A stretch of DNA of 20,854 nt, from NCBI RefSeq assembly GCF_006345805.1, contig NW_021824245.1, forward strand, positions 1-20,854, given 5' to 3'. Under the pieces are notes generated by a model. It worked only from the letters and a program-made list of their open reading frames with translations, was not told the DNA's origin and did no database searches. The DNA comes from Octopus sinensis (taxonomy: Eukaryota). Shown piece by piece: positions 2,196 to 17,123 of this stretch. The position numbers and the translations under genes are program-made. Numbering within the stretch: position 1 is the stretch's first letter; each line of letters starts with the position of its first letter.

Positions 2196-2290
2196 TGCAT
2201 ACACACATATATACGCATACACATACACACGTATATATTTATATATATACATACAAACATACATACATACATACATACATACATACTTTA
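1870..2290. repeat. Compound microsatellites (CA)n, (CT)n, (TA)n, (CATA)n
   Basis: Directly visible simple repeats. Confidence 0.95.
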
Positions 2291-2543
2291 TATATCACAA
2301 CACAGGTCTATTAATTCCTTCATCACTCCACTGACCTTTAACTTTAATAGGTCATCCCTAATAATTCCAGCACACCGCTCTTACTCCTACACTTTCACGC
2401 TCTTACACAGTGGCATCCAATTTTATTTCTTTCATAGACAATTCCCATCATACGCACTTTTAGATGTGGATATCTCCTTTCTTTATTTCACAGAATCCCT
2501 CTCTTCTCGTTTCACTTAAGCTTTCCAGTCGTAACTTCCTGAA
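2216..2543. repeat. Dispersed repeat, copy 1 (microsatellite end plus ~255 bp complex sequence)
   Basis: Nearly identical to 6347-6658; about 4 substitutions seen in the complex part. Both copies end at GTAACTTCCTGAA. Confidence 0.9.
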
Positions 2544-6336: not shown

Positions 6337-6346
6337 TATATATACA

Positions 6347-6658
6347 CATACACATACACACGTGTATATTTATATATATACATACAAACATACATACATA
6401 CTTTATATATTACAACACAGGTCTATTAATTCCTTCATCACTCCACTGACCTTTAACTTTAATAGGTCATCCCTAATAATTCCAGCACACCGCTCTTACT
6501 CCTACACTTTCACGCTCTTACACAGTGGCATCCAATTTTATTTCTTTCATAGACAATTCCCATCATACGCACTTTTAGACGTGGATATCTCCTTTCTTTA
6601 TTTCACAGAATCGCTCTCTTCTCATTTCACTTAAGCTTTCCAGTCGTAACTTCCTGAA
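6347..6658. repeat. Dispersed repeat, copy 2 (see 2216-2543)
   Basis: Near identity to 2216-2543. Abuts and truncates the left TIR of the mariner. Confidence 0.9.
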
Positions 6659-7887
6659 TGAAATGTCCGATTTTCTTATGCACCAAGTTTGACAGTCGTT
6701 AACTCTAATGTTTAATCCTGACAATTCTTTGTTTTACGACATTGAAGAGTTACATCATCACTTTTCGAAATGCAATTCATGGTGTCTGATGATATTGTGA
6801 GTTTTCTCTCGTAAATCAATTTTTGTGAATCCATGGATAGATAAAGAATTTGTGCTGTTTATGAATATGAGTTCCGTCGTGGAACCAATGTATCCCAGAC
6901 ATCTCGAAACATCAGTGAGTAAAGATGTAACGAATGAGCGCACTGCGCATCGATGGTTTGGGAAGTTTAGGTCTTGTGACTTTACTCTTGAAAATCAGCT
7001 CCAAGGTAGAGCTGAGACCAAGGTGGATAATGATGAACTGGAAACTGTAGTGGAAGCAGATACCTCTCAAACTACGCGTGAATTAGCAGCAAGGTTTGAT
7101 GTTTCGATTGCAGCTGTATTGGACCATCTGAAACACTTCAGCAAGGTAAAGAAGCTGGACAAGTGGGTACCACACAAACTGAACGAGCATCAAATGACAC
7201 GTCGTCTTCAGACTTGTTGTTCTTTGCTGTCACGGTATAAAGAAGAACCATTTTTGCATCTTATTGTTATGTGTGGTGAAAAATGGATTCTTTTCAACGA
7301 TAGCAAGCGTTCTGCACAGTGGTTGGATAGACACGAAGTGCCAAAATACAATCCCAAAAAGAATATTCACCAAAAAAAAAAAGCTAATGGTGTCTGTTTG
7401 GTGGCCCAGCACTGGTGTCATCCACTACAGCTTCATGAGACCTGGTAAGTCAATTACAGCAGATGTATACATCAACCAACTGGATAAAATGGTGAGTGAA
7501 CTTGCAATTAACCGAGATTGGTCATTAGAGACAGGCCAATTCTCTTGCAAGACAATGCTTGACCACATGTTGCACAAAGAACACTACTCAAGTTACAAGA
7601 ACTGAATTTGGAAGTACTCTGTCATCCACCATATTCACCAGACCTTGCACCAACCTTTTTCAGGCATTAGACAACTTTTTTCAAGGAAAACACTTCAAAT
7701 CTGAAGAAGATGAAAATACAGCCTTTCGTGAATTCTTCGCTGCCGGCATAAATAAACTACCGATAAAATGGCAAAATTGTGTTGATAATTGAGGTGCATA
7801 CTTTGATTAAATGCTTTGCTTTTTGTTGAGATAAAGTAAAAATAAACTTTCAGTTCAAAACTGGACATTTAATTCTTAATGACCTGA
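6656..7887 (+). mobile_element. Near full-length defective mariner transposon with truncated left TIR
   Basis: Right TIR 7857-7887 followed by TA (7888-7889). The left end keeps only the inner 19 bp (GAATGAAATGTCCGATTTT, 16/19 match to the reverse complement of the right TIR). Encloses a transposase pseudogene. Confidence 0.93.
6833..7810 (+). pseudogene. Mariner (DD34D-type) transposase pseudogene
   Basis: MDR*RICAVYEYEFRRGTN...ERTAHRWF..., WVPHKL, MCGEKW (first Asp lost), LQDNA, HPPYSPDLAPT with the following Asp codon region deleted, KW..CVDN*GAYFD*. Several stops and frameshifts, e.g. at the A-run near 7374-7382. Confidence 0.95.
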
Positions 7888-7902
7888 TATATATGCCAGG
7901 TT

Positions 7903-8311
7903 CTATACAGGACAGTGCTACTGTTGTTTTTAGCCTCAGGAAGACATCTCCTCCAGCTGGCTAACGACACTAGTATTTGTGAGGGAGGTCATTGCTCCCA
8001 TCTCTAGCCTTACGTGATACACATGGACCCGAGTTTCTGACTGGTTACTCGTCCTCAGCATGCGTTAATCACTGGCTAGTGATGAACACTCTTTCCTCTC
8101 GCAAAATTACTATATGCTTTTCTAGCGACTCACTGTCACTGATCTCGTAAAAGAGAGAGATTTGTTATATTAAATCTCTGAGAGAGATATAAACAGTAGC
8201 AGTACAGAATCGTAAAATATATTTGCCAACTAAGTGTGGCGTCCTATACAGGACAATGCTACTGTTGTTTATAGCCCCAGGAAGACATCTCCTCCGGCTA
8301 GCTAACGACAC
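7903..8311 (-). mobile_element. Candidate retrozyme / hammerhead-bearing non-autonomous retroelement: 341-bp unit plus 68-bp terminal redundancy
   Basis: Direct repeats 7903-7970 and 8244-8311 (5 mismatches in 68 bp) enclose a type I hammerhead. Lies between a TA run and a (CATA)n tract. Confidence 0.6.
8004..8079 (-). ncRNA. Type I hammerhead ribozyme with extended helix I and a GUC cleavage triplet
   Basis: Minus strand: CUAGCC-A-GUGAU-UA-ACGCAUG-CUGAGGA-CGAGUAACCAGUCA-GAAA-CUCGGG-UC/CAUGUGU-AUCAC-GUAA-GGCUAG. Helix I pairs 7+5+6 bp. Predicted cleavage is between plus-strand 8026 and 8025. Confidence 0.85.
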
Positions 8312-8326
8312 ACAGTCTGTGACCGA

Positions 8327-8669
8327 TACATACATACATACATGCATGCATACATACATACATATATACATGCATACATACATACATGCATGCATGCATG
8401 CATGCATGCATACATACATACATACATACATACATGCATACATACATACATGCATGCATACATACATGCATGCATACATACATGCATGCATACATACATA
8501 CATACATACATACATACATACATGCATGCATACATACATACATACATACATACATACATACATACATACATACAGACATACATACATACATACATACATA
8601 CATGCATGCATACATACATACATACATACATACATGCATACATGCATACATACATACATACATACATAC
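8327..8669. repeat. (CATA/CATG)n tetranucleotide microsatellite
   Basis: Directly visible; it produces the MYVC/HTYI ORFs in the track. Confidence 0.97.
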
Positions 8670-8767
8670 AACATATTTTACGGTCGCCCTTGGTCTTGTG
8701 GAAGTACAATAAATGAGTACTCTACAATAAGTACTGTAAAATTTTCAGCATGACGTTGAACTGTTTT

Positions 8768-9060
8768 TGGTAAAAAGCTAGCTTCCCAACCACATGGTTC
8801 TGGGTTCAGTTCCACTGCGTGGCACCTTCGTCAAGAGTCTATTATAGCTGAACAAAGCCTTGTGAGCGGATTTAGTAGACAGAAACTGAAAGAAGCTCGT
8901 CGTATGTGTGTGTGTGTGTGTTTGTCCCCCACCATCGCTTGACAACCGATTTTGGTGTGTTTACGCCGCGTTACTTAGCGGCTTGTTCGATTAAAGGCGG
9001 TACACCAGTTTGGCCGCAGTCAAATGAATGAAACAAGTAAAAGAGTAAAAGAATAAAAAT
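8768..9060 (+). mobile_element. tRNA-derived SINE, family B
   Basis: Head TGGTAAAAAGCTAGCTTCCCAACCACATGGTTCTGGGTTCAGTTCC with A- and B-box-like motifs, an internal (TG)n, and a tail AAACAAGTAAAAGAGTAAAAGAATAAAAA. Homologous to 16889-17123 and 17196-17310. Confidence 0.85.
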
Positions 9061-10081: not shown

Positions 10082-10115
<34 letters not shown>

Positions 10116-10139
10116 CTGTGTGTGTGTGTGTGTGTGTGT

Positions 10140-10387
10140 ATGTTTGTATGTATGTATACTAGTGATAGCACTTTAGGTATGGCAGGCTTTTGTATCGCGA
10201 GATTATTTTGTGTATATTATTATTGCACGGGTTTCATCGTGCAACTTTGATCATCATAGATCTGCTCAATCCGGGCTGGCCTGGGGCTAAACAGCAGCAA
10301 CAACGATAATAATAATAATAATAATAATAATAATATAATAATAATATAATAATAATGATGATGATGATGATGATGATGATGAATGAC

Positions 10388-10427
<40 letters not shown>

Positions 10428-10567
10428 GTGTTGATGATGATGATAATAAATGATGGTGATGATGAGGATGATGATGATGATGATGATGATAATAATAATA
10501 ATAATGATGATGATGATGATGATGATAAATAATAATGATGATAATAATAATAATAATAATAATAATA

Positions 10568-10606
<39 letters not shown>

Positions 10607-11299
10607 TGATAATCCTAACAATGTTAACAGCAACAACAACTACTAGTATTGTTACTACTACAATGGCGACGAGTCTAACAACAACAACGACAACAACAAC
10701 AACAATAGCATCGCCCACTCAATGGTTCATTTACTCTTCTAATGGCCTGTTGAAATATTTGGCCAAAGCATTGTAACTACAATATCTTGTTGTGTGTGAA
10801 TCCGTGGAAAGAATGCAAGATTTTCTGTTATGCACACACGTACACATACACACACGTACACATACACACACACACATACATACGTACAGACATACATACG
10901 TACGTACGTACGTACATACATACATGCGTACATGCATTGCTGGTCACTCATAACCTTCAGGGGAAGAGTAAATCACACAAAGTTGATTTGTAGCCGTTGG
11001 ATCATTTACAAAATTATATTCACATGAATTGACCGGACGTCGTTGACCTTCTGATACTTACTGATTGACGTCTTCATTTCGACCAATAATTTGGACTAAA
11101 GACTTGGCGTAACGGAATCTGAAACTCGTCAACCATAAAGGCTGCTCTTTGATCGCTTCATTCTGATTTCCACAAAACAGACTTGCATTTAGGAACGTTT
11201 GAAGGTTTGGAGAAGAAAGAAAAATGAAAAAAGGACCTTTCACGACCTACTATAAACGAACAGCTAGCAGCGGCAAAGAGACAGAAAGAGAAGAAGAAG

Positions 11300-11330
<31 letters not shown>

Positions 11331-11571
11331 CGAGAGAGAGAGAGAGAGACGAAGCTCTGTCTGTCTGTGTGTGTTGTGTGTGTGTGTGTGGTGTGTGTGT
11401 GTGTGTATGTTTGTATGTATGTATACTAGTGATAGCACTTTAGGTATGGCAGGCTTTTGTATCGCGAGATTATTTTGTGTATATTATTATTGCACGGTTT
11501 CATCGTGCAACTTTGATCATCATAGATCTGCTCAATCCGGGCTGGCCTGGGGCTAAACAGCAGCAACAACG

Positions 11572-11616
<45 letters not shown>

Positions 11617-11656
11617 TATAATAATGATGATGATGATGATGATGATGATGAATGAC

Positions 11657-11688
<32 letters not shown>

Positions 11689-12558
11689 GATGATGATGAT
11701 GATGATGATGATGATAATAAATGATGGTGATGATGAGGATGATGAGATGATGATGATGATGATAATAATAATAATATGATGATGATGAATGATGATAATA
11801 ATAATGATGATAATAATAATAATAATATAATAATATAATAATAATAATAATATAATAATATAATAATGATGATAATCCTAACAATGTTAACAGCAACAAC
11901 AACTACTAGTATTGTTACTACTACAATGGCGACGAGTCTAACAACAACAACGACAACAACACAACAATAGCATCGCCCACTCAATGGTTCATTTACTCTT
12001 CTAATGGCCTGTTGAAATATTTGGCCAAAGCATTGTAACTACAATATCTTGTTGTGTGTGAATCCGTGGAAAGAATGCAAGATTTTCTGTTATGCACACA
12101 CGTACACATACACACACGTACACATACACACACACACATACATACGTACAGACATACATACGTACGTACGTACGTACATACATACATGCGTACATGCATT
12201 GCTGGTCACTCATAACCTTCAGGGGAAGAGTAAATCACACAAAGTTGATTTGTAGCCGTTGGATCATTTACAAAATTATATTCACATGAAATTGACCGGA
12301 CGTCGTTGACCTTCTGATACTTACTGATTGACGTCTTCATTTCGACCAATAATTTGGACTAAAGACTTGGCGTAACGGAATCTGAAACTCGTCAACCATA
12401 AAGGCTGCTCTTTGATCGCTTCATTCTGATTTCCACAAAACAGACTTGCATTTAGGGAACGTTTGAAGGTTTGGAGAAGAAAGAAAAATGAAAAAAGGAC
12501 CTTTCACGACCTACTATAAACGAACAGCTAGCAGCGGCAAAGAGACAGAAAGAGAAGA

Positions 12559-12608
<50 letters not shown>

Positions 12609-12652
12609 GAGAGAGACGAAGCTCTGTCTGTCTGTGTGTGTGTGTGTGTGTG
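10140..12652. repeat. Tandem duplication of a ~1.26-kb unit (about 10140-11406 and 11407-12652), bounded by (TG)n tracts
   Basis: Offset 1262-1267 across the unit. The differences I found are single-base indels and microsatellite length changes. Confidence 0.95.
10310..10700. repeat. (AAT)n/(GAT)n/(CAA)n trinucleotide microsatellite block (duplicated at about 11570-11965)
   Basis: Directly visible. Confidence 0.95.
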
Positions 12653-13970: not shown

Positions 13971-14491
13971 GGATAAGGGAAATTATAGAAGGAATACATC
14001 CAGGCAATCAATACAAATACCAAAGTATAATCTAAAACACACAACGAAATAAATATACACATAAATTTATAAATCATTGAACAAAATTACATATAAAAGT
14101 CATATGTAAAAACTATGCATCATGTAACTACTATACTTTACCCGAATTCACTCGAATATGTATATATTTTTTTTATCTACCTATTTACCCCTGAATTTTA
14201 AAATGTTGAACTCTCATCCGACATTTCGTATAAACATCCAATTCTTAATCGATTCGAACAGTTCCTTTTGGAAGCCCTGAACTCGAATTTTTATCTCTTT
14301 ATTTGTCACTCCTCTATTCGCTACCTGAACCCAACGTACATGATACATACTTTTCACATGACTTTTACATGTAAGTTTGTTCACTGATTTATAAATTTCG
14401 GTGTATATTTATTTCGTTGTTTGCTCTAAAATTATACTTTGAAATTTGCATTGATTGCCTGGACGCGTTCCTTCTATAATTTCCTTTATCC
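13971..14491. mobile_element. Diverged foldback element: ~155-bp arms (13971-14126, 14337-14491) with a 210-bp spacer
   Basis: The arms align as reverse complements at roughly 85% by eye. The left arm starts at a (TA)n tract. Confidence 0.8.
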
Positions 14492-16888: not shown

Positions 16889-17123
16889 GCTAGTTTACGG
16901 GGACGTACACAAACCAACACCGGTCGTTAAGCGGTGATGAGTGGGCAAACACGGACACAAACACACACACACACATATATGACGGGCTTCTTTCAGTTTC
17001 CGTCTGTCAAATCCTCTCACAAAGCTTTGGTCAGCCCGAGGCTGACACTTGCCCAAGGTGCCTCGCAGTGAGACTGAACCCAGAACCATGTGGTTGAGAA
17101 GCAAGATTCTTATCACACGGCCA
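16889..17123 (-). mobile_element. tRNA-derived SINE, family B (5' half)
   Basis: Reverse complement of the head and middle of 8768-9060. Confidence 0.85.

What the first reader, a model, noticed from the sequence alone, without database searches (positions are those of the whole stretch)
8004..8079. Well-formed type I hammerhead ribozyme on the minus strand
Seen: the minus strand has CUGAGGA (plus 8058-8052), GAAA (8037-8034), helix III A-U/C-G/U-G closing on the self-complementary ACUCGGGU, and a GUC triplet (8028-8026). Helix I is 7 bp, a 2-nt UA bulge, 5 bp, a 1x4 internal loop, then 6 bp. The G-U wobbles work only on the minus strand (they would be A-C on plus), which supports the strand call. 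Helix II is CGAGU-AACC-AGUCA with only 3 of 5 pairs (C.A next to the core, and G.G), so this copy may be impaired. Established: bulged helix I plus a palindromic helix III is the layout of metazoan type I hammerheads that cleave as dimers. Inference: this is a relic or live copy of a self-cleaving family. I cannot tell whether it is already described for cephalopods.
Basis: partly seen in the sequence, partly recalled or inferred. Interest (0 to 1): 0.85.

Follow-up and report, generated by a model that had tools for sequence, protein, structure and literature searches.

The report
Decayed hammerhead ribozyme in octopus retroelement
The motif is a real but damaged type I hammerhead ribozyme inside one old copy of a roughly 355-base, non-coding, ribozyme-carrying retroelement present over a thousand times in this 2.7-Gb (probably octopus) genome; it is a new family of an already known kind, not a new kind of element.

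Summary

The motif lies in a 428-nt repeat copy (window 8327..7900, minus sense). This is 1.2 units of a ~355-nt family with at least 1,192 first-look candidates in the genome.

The family consensus is a better hammerhead than the window copy:
- helix I is a perfect 7 bp next to the core, plus 5 and 6 bp further out;
- helix II is GGGU/ACCC, with a C.A next to the core;
- helix III is the perfect palindrome ACUCGAGU.

Copies decay neutrally and show no covariation beyond shuffles. They have dispersed 5' ends. Their 3' ends fall at two AU-rich sites that often abut (TA)n/(TG)n runs. One third are longer than one unit, and many form head-to-head inverted pairs.

This is the architecture of non-LTR retrozymes and Penelope-like elements. 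Rfam Hammerhead_1 misses the window copy and scores an exact-core copy at 15.6 bits (cut-off 34).

Self-cleavage, circular RNA and the mobilising enzyme are all untested; no autonomous partner was found.

Verdict: a relic copy, and a new member of a known kind.

The parts
7900..8327 (-). Whole repeat copy, about 1.2 units of the ~355-nt family. In minus sense it consists of a 16-nt segment (consensus c340-355), one unit (c1-339), then a partial second unit (c1-71).
   Evidence: It is 86-89% identical to the family consensus. The consensus positions are the c-coordinates used throughout this report.
8312..8327 (-). 5'-terminal 16 nt, ATCGGTCACAGACTGT (consensus c340-355). It is present at the 5' end of the copy but missing at the internal unit junction.
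7971..8311 (-). One complete unit (341 nt here; 355 nt in the consensus, which includes the 16-nt segment).
7900..7970 (-). Partial second unit. It is a direct repeat of 8241-8311 at 92% identity and 341-nt spacing, a pseudo-LTR-like partial tandem.
   Evidence: (repeat family D4).
8004..8079 (-). Type I hammerhead motif, 76 nt.
   Evidence: (family covariance model R1: 105 bits).
8059..8079 (-). Helix I, 5' strand: 6 bp, unpaired A8073, 5 bp, UA bulge at 8067-8066, then 7 bp.
8052..8058 (-). Core CUGAGGA (C3-A9).
8038..8051 (-). Helix II and loop, CGAGU-AACC-AGUCA. Three of five pairs form here. The consensus is CGGGU-AACC-ACCCA: four pairs plus a C.A.
8034..8037 (-). Core GAAA (G12 A13 A14 A15.1).
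8027..8034 (-). Helix III palindrome ACUCGGGU (consensus ACUCGAGU). Within one molecule it can form only 2-3 bp. Between two hammerheads it can form 8 bp.
8026..8026 (-). C17. The predicted cleavage is 3' of this base, between 8026 and 8025.
   Evidence: together with established hammerhead numbering.
8004..8025 (-). Helix I, 3' strand.
8123..8141 (-). Decayed copy of the family hairpin, consensus CAGCGAC-AGTTT-GTCGCTG (c172-190). In other loci, head-to-head inverted copies join at this hairpin.
   Evidence: The link between the hairpin and the junctions is inference.
8326..8675 (.). (ATAC)n microsatellite abutting the 5' end of the copy.

Best explanation
Window 8327..7900 (minus sense) is an old, inactive insertion of a non-coding, non-autonomous retroelement with a unit of about 355 nt. 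The unit carries one type I hammerhead ribozyme. The element belongs to the class called non-LTR retrozymes, which are related to the pseudo-LTRs of Penelope-like elements (PLEs).

Proposed life cycle of the family, inferred from anatomy and from the published model:
1. Source loci holding more than one unit are transcribed in hammerhead sense.
2. The hammerheads pair two by two, because helix III is only a palindrome, and cut after GUC.
3. The released ~355-nt monomer, which is highly self-paired, is ligated into a circle by a host ligase.
4. A reverse transcriptase, most likely from a PLE, copies the circular or multimeric RNA. The primer is a nicked (TA)n/(TG)n microsatellite that anneals to one of two AU-rich template sites.
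5. Copying often runs for more than one turn and often stops early. Some cDNAs snap back at an internal hairpin.
6. The outcome is copies with fixed 3' ends, ragged 5' ends, partial tandems and head-to-head inverted pairs.

Shown here: the motif, the family, its consensus, the polarity and end structure of copies, neutral decay, the strong self-pairing of the unit, and abundant PLEs in the genome.

Inferred, not shown: catalysis, dimer action, circular RNA, and PLE as the mobiliser.

The window copy itself has one hammerhead with a weakened helix II and no second cleavage site. It cannot release a monomer.
For: Motif and chance.

Family size: (222 core matches against 0 in the control; 13 exact).

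The consensus is a better hammerhead than the window copy.

The only Rfam family matching an exact-core copy is Hammerhead_1. The match covers the whole model at 15.6 bits, and the model's own helix III is a zero-loop palindrome like this one.

Unit and ends:
- 355-nt consensus.
- 3' ends cluster at c91-103 (29 pieces) and c141-162 (29 pieces) out of 83, while 5' starts are dispersed.
- 27 of 58 preferred 3' ends abut TA/TG/CA runs, against 7 of 84 5' flanks.
- 28 of 85 pieces exceed one unit (maximum 615 nt), and there are 22 head-to-head junctions.

There is no enrichment of copy ends at the cleavage site, so the templates were uncleaved or religated.

The circular unit folds at -123.7 kcal/mol against -91.8 +/- 5.6 for shuffles (z = -5.7). 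GC content is 45%.

A cofold of two consensus hammerheads forms the 8-bp intermolecular helix III.

PLEs are abundant in this genome: GIY-YIG gives 4,846 candidates with open frames up to 883 aa, and there is an intact 765-aa RT plus GIY-YIG ORF.

Published class features match (PMC7229834; PLE tandem/inverted insertions and microsatellite bias, PMC8557442; retrozymes as PLE derivatives, 10.64898/2026.07.22.740005).
Against: - Rfam does not call the window copy, and the best family copy is far below the gathering score.
- Even the consensus has C.A where nearly all hammerheads have G10.1-C11.1, which may reduce or abolish activity.
- There is no covariation in 33 copies (88.3% of cells paired, identical to the shuffle mean).
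- Only a weak hint of lower core divergence appears in 15 unselected copies (6.7% against 11.9%, p = 0.04).
- No array longer than about 1.7 units was seen in 53 non-redundant loci, whereas published retrozymes reach long multimers.
- No PLE sharing this sequence was found in 21 sampled PLE loci.
- Microsatellite-targeting LINEs could produce similar ends.
- No expression data were available.
Confidence: 0.72

Rival explanations
1. The family is an ordinary SINE-like or satellite-like repeat, and the hammerhead resemblance in its master sequence is fortuitous or long dead. No RNA of this family ever self-cleaved.
For: - C.A at position 10.1-11.1 in the consensus.
- Sub-threshold Rfam score.
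- No covariation.
- In the same genome, a young and abundant repeat carries a hammerhead-like motif with a non-canonical core (UUGAUAA) and still proliferates. Hammerhead integrity is therefore not needed for spread.
Against: - The chance expectation for the motif is at most about 1e-3 per window, before counting the 11 extra helix I pairs and the palindrome.
- The consensus improves the hammerhead at helices I, II and III.
- The hammerhead strand coincides with the template strand deduced independently from copy ends.
- The unit has the size, GC content, self-pairing and partial-tandem habit of known hammerhead elements.
- There is no tRNA, 5S or 7SL head.
- An amphibian retrozyme hammerhead with a U.U at the base of helix II is active (PMC7229834).
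Confidence: 0.12
2. The hammerhead-bearing unit is real, but it is mobilised like a SINE by a microsatellite-specific LINE (for example the R4/Dong type) from linear read-through transcripts. Penelope-like enzymes and circular RNA are not involved.
For: - 3' ends lie at AU-rich sites abutting (TA)n/(TG)n, with 5' truncation.
- Inversions with 5' truncation are also produced by LINE twin priming (established knowledge).
- Dong-R4 LINEs are reported as abundant among recently active octopus elements (PMC13282606).
- No PLE partner was found.
Against: - One third of copies exceed one unit, although genomic arrays seen here are short. This is easier to explain with a circular template or PLE-style partial tandems.
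- Tandem plus inverted 5'-truncated arrangements and microsatellite bias are described hallmarks of PLE insertions.
- Published retrozymes co-occur with PLEs and are related to PLE pseudo-LTRs.
Confidence: 0.2
3. The copy is not a separate non-autonomous family. It is a detached pseudo-LTR fragment of an autonomous Penelope-like element.
For: - PLE pseudo-LTRs carry type I hammerheads with palindromic helix III.
- PLEs are very abundant in this genome.
Against: - In 53 loci the unit closes on itself (c355 to c1) with no internal coding region.
- The window has no RT or GIY-YIG ORF.
- Only 2 of 80 loci have PLE coding fragments nearby, and neither is contiguous with the repeat.
- 21 PLE loci lack any similarity to the unit.
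- Helix I here is 18 bp, unlike the minimal PLE hammerheads of this genome.
Confidence: 0.08
4. The hammerhead at 8004-8079 is a host-domesticated, single-locus regulatory ribozyme.
For: None specific. Conserved single-copy hammerheads do exist in amniote genes.
Against: - It is one of over a thousand dispersed, neutrally decaying repeat copies.
- Its helix II is damaged.
- It lies in a repeat-rich 20.8-kb unplaced contig with no host gene detected.
Confidence: 0.02

Closest known systems
Non-LTR retrozymes of metazoans (Cervera & de la Pena 2020, PMC7229834), e.g. the Mytilus galloprovincialis families and the axolotl Rtz_331/Rtz_353 families
   Same: - One type I hammerhead in a non-coding unit of 170-400 nt (355 here).
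- GC below 50% (45% here).
- Copies longer than one unit.
- No LTR, PBS, PPT or ORF.
- Highly self-paired unit RNA.
- Coexistence with PLEs.
- Like the axolotl motifs: a weak palindromic helix III suited to dimer action, and a mismatch at the base of helix II (U.U in HHR_Amex2, C.A here).
   Different: - Only short arrays (up to 1.7 units) were seen, not long multimers.
- Helix I is unusually long (18 bp with a bulge and an internal loop).
- 3' ends lie at two AU-rich sites next to (TA)n/(TG)n.
- No expression or circular RNA data.
- No cephalopod family is described in the papers read.
Hammerheads in pseudo-LTRs of Penelope-like elements (Cervera & de la Pena 2014; Craig et al. 2021, PMC8557442)
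   Same: - Type I topology and palindromic helix III.
- Partial tandems (pseudo-LTRs), inverted 5'-truncated neighbour copies, and an insertion bias for microsatellites.
   Different: - No RT/GIY-YIG ORF is attached.
- The hammerhead is not the minimal variant. This genome's minimal PLE-type motif (GUACCUGAAGAG...GAAACAUGUGUC GUAC) is unrelated in sequence.
Classical hammerhead repeats: newt satellite 2 (~330 bp), Schistosoma Sm-alpha, the cave-cricket pDo500 satellite
   Same: - A ~330-350-nt unit with one type I hammerhead.
- The newt motif needs a double-hammerhead (dimer) because helix III is too short.
   Different: - Those are long tandem satellites or SINE-like families in other phyla, with canonical G10.1-C11.1.
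- Their sequences are unrelated to this family. Part of this comparison rests on my own knowledge, not on a test made here.
Rfam RF00163 Hammerhead_1
   Same: An exact-core family copy aligns over the whole model (1-45), including the model's zero-loop palindromic helix III.
   Different: It scores 15.6 bits against a gathering score of 34. The window copy is not reported even at E <= 10.

Membership tests
Hammerhead ribozyme, type I (Rfam RF00163 / clan CL00010) | Conserved core: C3 U4 G5 A6 N7 G8 A9, G12 A13 A14, the A15.1-U16.1 pair, and H17 | tested here: met
   CUGAGGA at 8058-8052, GAAA at 8037-8034, U8027 and C8026. The family consensus has the same core.
Hammerhead ribozyme, type I (Rfam RF00163 / clan CL00010) | Three helices around the core, with helix I open (type I topology) | tested here: met
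   Helix I has 18 bp. Helix II has 3 of 5 pairs in the window copy and 4 of 5 in the consensus. Helix III has 2-3 bp within one molecule, or an 8-nt palindrome between two.
Hammerhead ribozyme, type I (Rfam RF00163 / clan CL00010) | Watson-Crick 10.1-11.1 pair (usually G-C) stacking on the core | tested here: not met
   C.A in the window copy and in 27 of 33 copies; U-A in 5 (pair 34-47).
Hammerhead ribozyme, type I (Rfam RF00163 / clan CL00010) | Score at or above Rfam's gathering threshold (34 bits) | tested here: not met
   No hit for the window copy. An exact-core copy, L038, scores 15.6 bits with E = 0.34.
Hammerhead ribozyme, type I (Rfam RF00163 / clan CL00010) | Covariation supporting the helices | tested here: inconclusive
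   33 copies give 88.3% of cells paired, equal to the shuffle mean, and 4 pairs with double changes against 3.9 expected. Copies of one family decay neutrally, so the test has no power. Other species could not be searched.
Hammerhead ribozyme, type I (Rfam RF00163 / clan CL00010) | Site-specific self-cleavage after H17 | not testable with these tools
   Needs in vitro transcription.
Non-LTR retrozyme (PMC7229834) | Type I hammerhead inside a non-coding repeat unit of about 150-450 bp with GC below 50% | tested here: met
   355-nt consensus unit, GC 45%, no ORF.
Non-LTR retrozyme (PMC7229834) | Tandem copies, from dimers to large multimers | tested here: inconclusive
   28 of 85 pieces exceed one unit, with a maximum of 615 nt. 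A few loci have two same-sense hammerheads 335-358 nt apart (L014, L018, L027). No long array appeared in 53 loci or among the 100 pattern places listed (of 222 matches).
Non-LTR retrozyme (PMC7229834) | No LTR, PBS or PPT, and no small-RNA (SINE) head | tested here: met
   The unit closes on itself. No tRNA or other Rfam family was found.
Non-LTR retrozyme (PMC7229834) | Highly self-paired unit RNA | tested here: met
   Circular fold at -123.7 kcal/mol, z = -5.7 against 200 shuffles.
Non-LTR retrozyme (PMC7229834) | Expressed as linear and circular RNA of unit length | not testable with these tools
   No transcriptome was available.
Non-LTR retrozyme (PMC7229834) | Coexistence with autonomous PLEs in the genome | tested here: met
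   GIY-YIG gives 4,846 candidates. There is a 765-aa RT plus GIY-YIG ORF in L081.
Autonomous Penelope-like element (pseudo-LTR) | Repeat flanks an RT plus GIY-YIG ORF, or is homologous to the terminus of one | tested here: not met
   - No such ORF in the window.
- PLE fragments occur near the repeat in only 2 of 80 loci, and neither is contiguous with it.
- 21 PLE loci show no similarity to the unit.
- The sample is small relative to thousands of PLE copies.

The most novel reading that the evidence does not exclude
This octopus family is a live-in-the-recent-past retrozyme with two distinctive properties. First, its hammerhead (C.A at position 10.1-11.1, 8-nt palindromic helix III) works only as a dimer. 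Second, its genomic copies are direct footprints of rolling-circle reverse transcription of a ~355-nt circular RNA. Those footprints are 3' ends at two AU-rich template sites abutting (TA)n/(TG)n, copies longer than one unit with no ends at the cleavage site, and inverted pairs joined at one hairpin. On this reading, reverse transcription was primed by microsatellite DNA through microhomology. That would be the first such element described in cephalopods and unusually clear genomic evidence for the circular-template step.
Probability: 0.3. Interest if true: 0.55.

Novelty: new member of a known kind. Interest (0 to 1): 0.35.

Why it matters
Hammerhead-bearing retroelements are known from cnidarians, bivalves, arthropods, flatworms and amphibians. 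In the papers I could search, cephalopod hammerheads appear only as a count of Rfam hits in the giant squid genome (PMC6962438). A detailed octopus repeat annotation mentions no ribozyme (PMC13282606).

This family escapes Rfam thresholds, so Rfam-based annotation would not find it. If it is active, it would add a naturally dimer-dependent hammerhead with an unusual base of helix II. It would also offer a tidy data set on how such elements are copied and inserted, through microsatellite microhomology and hairpin-centred inversions.

For the window itself, the practical message is simple: this is repeat sequence, not a host gene.

Tried and rejected
1. Rfam at gathering score on the window and at E <= 10 on 7850-8250 gave no hammerhead. 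On 13 exact-core loci, microsatellite-driven false miRNA hits swamped the table. A narrow search of L038 gave the only hammerhead hit, which was sub-threshold.

2. Covariation within the family shows no signal. The CpG-linked pair 25-61 has 5 U-A double changes but also 13 C.A, so there is no association.

I used pattern and family searches instead.

4. Search for the autonomous partner:
- L081 (an intact PLE) and 20 further PLE 3' flanks have no similarity to the unit and no canonical hammerhead.
- tblastn of the PLE ORF against 80 loci found only two unlinked fragments.

5. The best R1 hit in a PLE locus (L087, 24 bits) belongs to a 97-100% identical young repeat whose own core reads UUGAUAA. 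It is therefore not a canonical hammerhead and not usable for covariation.

6. Post-insertion constraint on the core: 6.7% against 11.9% divergence in 15 unselected copies, p = 0.04. This is too weak and too confounded to claim. The primary copies are biased by how they were found.

7. RNA-editing footprint in copies: A>G at 3.9% against T>C at 4.0%, so there is no strand asymmetry.

8. SINE head: no tRNA and no small-RNA family.

9. Strand discrimination by folding energy fails, because both strands fold about equally well.

Full report
**The observation**

- CUGAGGA is at 8058-8052.
- CGAGU-AACC-AGUCA is at 8051-8038.
- GAAA is at 8037-8034.
- ACUCGGGU is at 8034-8027.
- GUC is at 8028-8026.
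- Helix I has 7 bp, a UA bulge, 5 bp, a 1x4 internal loop and 6 bp, reaching out to 8079/8004.

RNAfold reproduces the whole of helix I (-25.1 kcal/mol, z = -2.74). Its minimum-energy fold extends helix I into the core instead of forming the catalytic junction. The plus strand folds nearly as well (z = -2.59), so energy does not pick the strand. What picks it are the core motifs and the G.U pairs and, as shown below, the polarity of the repeat family.

To estimate chance I wrote a descriptor of the same stringency as the proximal part of the motif. It finds only this site in both strands of the window. In 40 Mb of dinucleotide-matched random sequence it gives 29 hits with a 2-bp helix I and 1 hit with a 7-bp helix I. 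That is at most about 1e-3 expected per window, before counting the 11 distal helix I pairs and the 8-nt palindrome.

Rfam does not report the site at gathering score, nor at E <= 10 on a 401-nt slice.

**It is a repeat**

The window is a whole 20.8-kb contig of a 2.72-Gb assembly in 13,516 contigs. That size matches what a paper gives for the chromosome-level Octopus sinensis assembly (PMC12564688).

The 121 nt around the motif have at least 1,192 first-look candidates in the genome. The 40 scored copies are 84-92% identical. The 33-nt core of the family consensus occurs 222 times at 3 or fewer mismatches, 13 of them exact, against 0 for the reversed control.

In the window, the repeat spans 8327..7900 in minus sense. 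There is a 341-nt period between 8241-8311 and 7900-7970, and an (ATAC)n run abuts the 5' end.

**The consensus is a better hammerhead than the window copy**

Thirty-three aligned copies give this consensus:

CUAGCUGGUGAUUAACACACG CUGAGGA CGGGU AACC ACCCA GAAA CUCGAGUC CGUGUGUAUCACGUAAGGCUAG

- The proximal helix I is a perfect 7 bp.
- Helix II is GGGU/ACCC, plus a C.A next to the core.
- Helix III is the perfect palindrome ACUCGAGU.

The window copy differs in three places. It has G10.3-C to A-U, which is compensated. It has C11.4 to G, which creates a G.G mismatch. It has one wobble each in helices I and III. Its core is intact.

A chance look-alike would not be expected to improve in the ancestral sequence, so I take the hammerhead to be a genuine feature of the family's source sequence.

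A narrow Rfam search of an exact-core copy returns Hammerhead_1 as the only family. The match covers the whole model, but at 15.6 bits against a threshold of 34. The Rfam model's own helix III is a zero-loop palindrome of the same design.

A cofold of two consensus hammerheads forms the 8-bp intermolecular helix III (-60.1 against 2 x -26.8 kcal/mol). This is the double-hammerhead arrangement known from salamander repeats (PMC7229834).

**Copies decay neutrally**

On the 33 copies, 88.3% of cells are paired, exactly the mean of the shuffles. Double changes are no more frequent than in the shuffles. Mean divergence from the consensus is 10.7%: 21% at CpG sites and 9.5% elsewhere.

In 15 copies that were not selected through the hammerhead, the core is somewhat less diverged than the rest of the unit (6.7% against 11.9%, p = 0.04). 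I do not lean on this result. A>G and T>C substitutions are equally frequent, so there is no RNA-editing footprint.

It needs other families or other species, which the tools could not reach.

**Anatomy of the family**

An iterated pile-up of 60 loci gives a 355-nt unit. The window copy is [c340-355][c1-339][c1-71], and it lacks the 16-nt segment at its internal junction.

I mapped 85 pieces from 53 non-redundant loci on a multimer of the consensus. Read in hammerhead sense, they show the following.
- The 5' starts are spread over the whole unit, with a small peak at c191-200.
- The 3' ends pile up at two sites: ...GGCAAUUAUAU(GUUA) at c91-103 (29 pieces) and ...GAUUUAAUAUAG at c141-162 (29 pieces).
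- At those sites, 27 of 58 flanks begin with a TA/TG/CA run, against 7 of 84 5' flanks.
- 28 pieces are longer than one unit, up to 615 nt.
- There are 22 head-to-head junctions between a minus and a plus piece, mostly near c186-193, at a 7-bp hairpin (CAGCGAC-AGTTT-GTCGCTG).
- Copy ends are not enriched at the cleavage site, so templates were uncleaved or religated.

The fixed 3' ends and ragged 5' ends show that the RNA template had hammerhead polarity. This is an independent confirmation of the strand.

The unit has no ORF, no tRNA or other small-RNA head, and 45% GC. As a circle it folds far better than shuffles (z = -5.7), with helix I of the hammerhead extended into a long stem.

**Comparison with known elements**

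These features match the published description of metazoan non-LTR retrozymes: a type I hammerhead in 170-400-nt, low-GC, self-paired, tandem-prone, non-coding units that coexist with Penelope-like elements (PMC7229834).

They also match the insertion habits described for Penelope-like elements: partial tandems forming pseudo-LTRs, adjacent inverted 5'-truncated copies, and microsatellite targets (PMC8557442). A 2026 preprint derives vertebrate retrozymes from PLE pseudo-LTRs.

PLEs are abundant in this genome. GIY-YIG gives 4,846 candidates with open frames up to 883 aa, and there is an intact 765-aa RT plus GIY-YIG ORF. The genome also holds a different, minimal hammerhead family that passes Rfam's threshold.

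I could not find the partner. The intact PLE and 20 further PLE 3' flanks share nothing with the unit and hold no canonical hammerhead. The two PLE fragments near family copies are not contiguous with them. A LINE that targets microsatellites remains a possible mobiliser.

**Verdict**

The site is a relic copy, about 11-14% diverged, with a single hammerhead and a weakened helix II, from a hammerhead-bearing non-autonomous retroelement family.

It is a new member of a known kind. I found no description of such a family in cephalopods. The only relevant mentions are a count of 235 Rfam Hammerhead_1 hits in the giant squid genome (PMC6962438) and an octopus repeat annotation that contains no mention of ribozymes (PMC13282606).

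Catalysis, dimer dependence, circular RNA and the mobilising enzyme are all inferred. The C.A at the base of helix II is the main reason to doubt full activity. A U.U at the same place in an active axolotl motif is a precedent.

Noticed in passing
window 6825-7605 (+): A relic of a mariner-type transposase split over two overlapping ORFs. Pfam Transposase_1 scores 1e-16 on 7264-7605, and there are weak HTH_Tnp/Transposase_1 matches on 6825-7448. It lies about 300 nt from the 3' end of the hammerhead repeat.
   Followed up: partly
window 8326-8675: A 350-bp (ATAC)n microsatellite with ATGC variants abuts the 5' end of the repeat copy. The whole contig is dense in TA, TG, AG and ATG/ATA microsatellites (75 TRF rows).
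   Followed up: no
window 10093-11386 and 11362-12652: A tandem duplication of about 1.27 kb at 97.7% identity, which includes its internal microsatellites.
   Followed up: no
window 2207-2543 and 6338-6658: Two direct copies of another ~330-bp dispersed repeat at 93.5% identity. There are also weaker inverted matches: 8768-8979 with 16889-17115, and 13971-14126 with 14337-14491.
   Followed up: no
L061-L080 (e.g. L061:1501-1545, L065:1501-1542): A second, unrelated hammerhead family in the same genome. It is a minimal type I motif, GUACCUGAAGAGACCCAGAACAGGUCGAAACAUGUGUCGUAC, and 8 of the 74 scored candidates are at or above Rfam's gathering score. Nearby copies occur, for example C16:25146363 and C16:25146794. 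No PLE coding sequence was detected within 1.5 kb by tblastn with one PLE protein.
   Followed up: partly
L087:1946-2027 (-): A very young and abundant repeat: at least 1,994 candidates, with the 40 full-length hits 97-100% identical. It carries a hammerhead-like motif with a similar helix II (GGGCAAC.ACCC), but the family's own core reads UUGAUAA instead of CUGANGA. It also shows inverted 5'-truncated neighbour copies. It lies next to a PLE GIY-YIG ORF, on the opposite strand.
   Followed up: partly
L081:469-2766 (+) and L081:2900-3350: An intact 765-aa Penelope-like ORF (RT plus C-terminal GIY-YIG); in the family search, seven further loci tie with this copy at the same score with a 781-aa open frame. 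Its 3' region holds several ~70-80-nt repeats containing TGATGACGTC...TTCTGCTTGACTA, but no canonical hammerhead.
   Followed up: no
family consensus c172-190; window 8123-8141 (-): A 7-bp hairpin (CAGCGAC-AGTTT-GTCGCTG) sits where most head-to-head inverted copy pairs join. This suggests snap-back priming or template switching at this point during insertion.
   Followed up: partly
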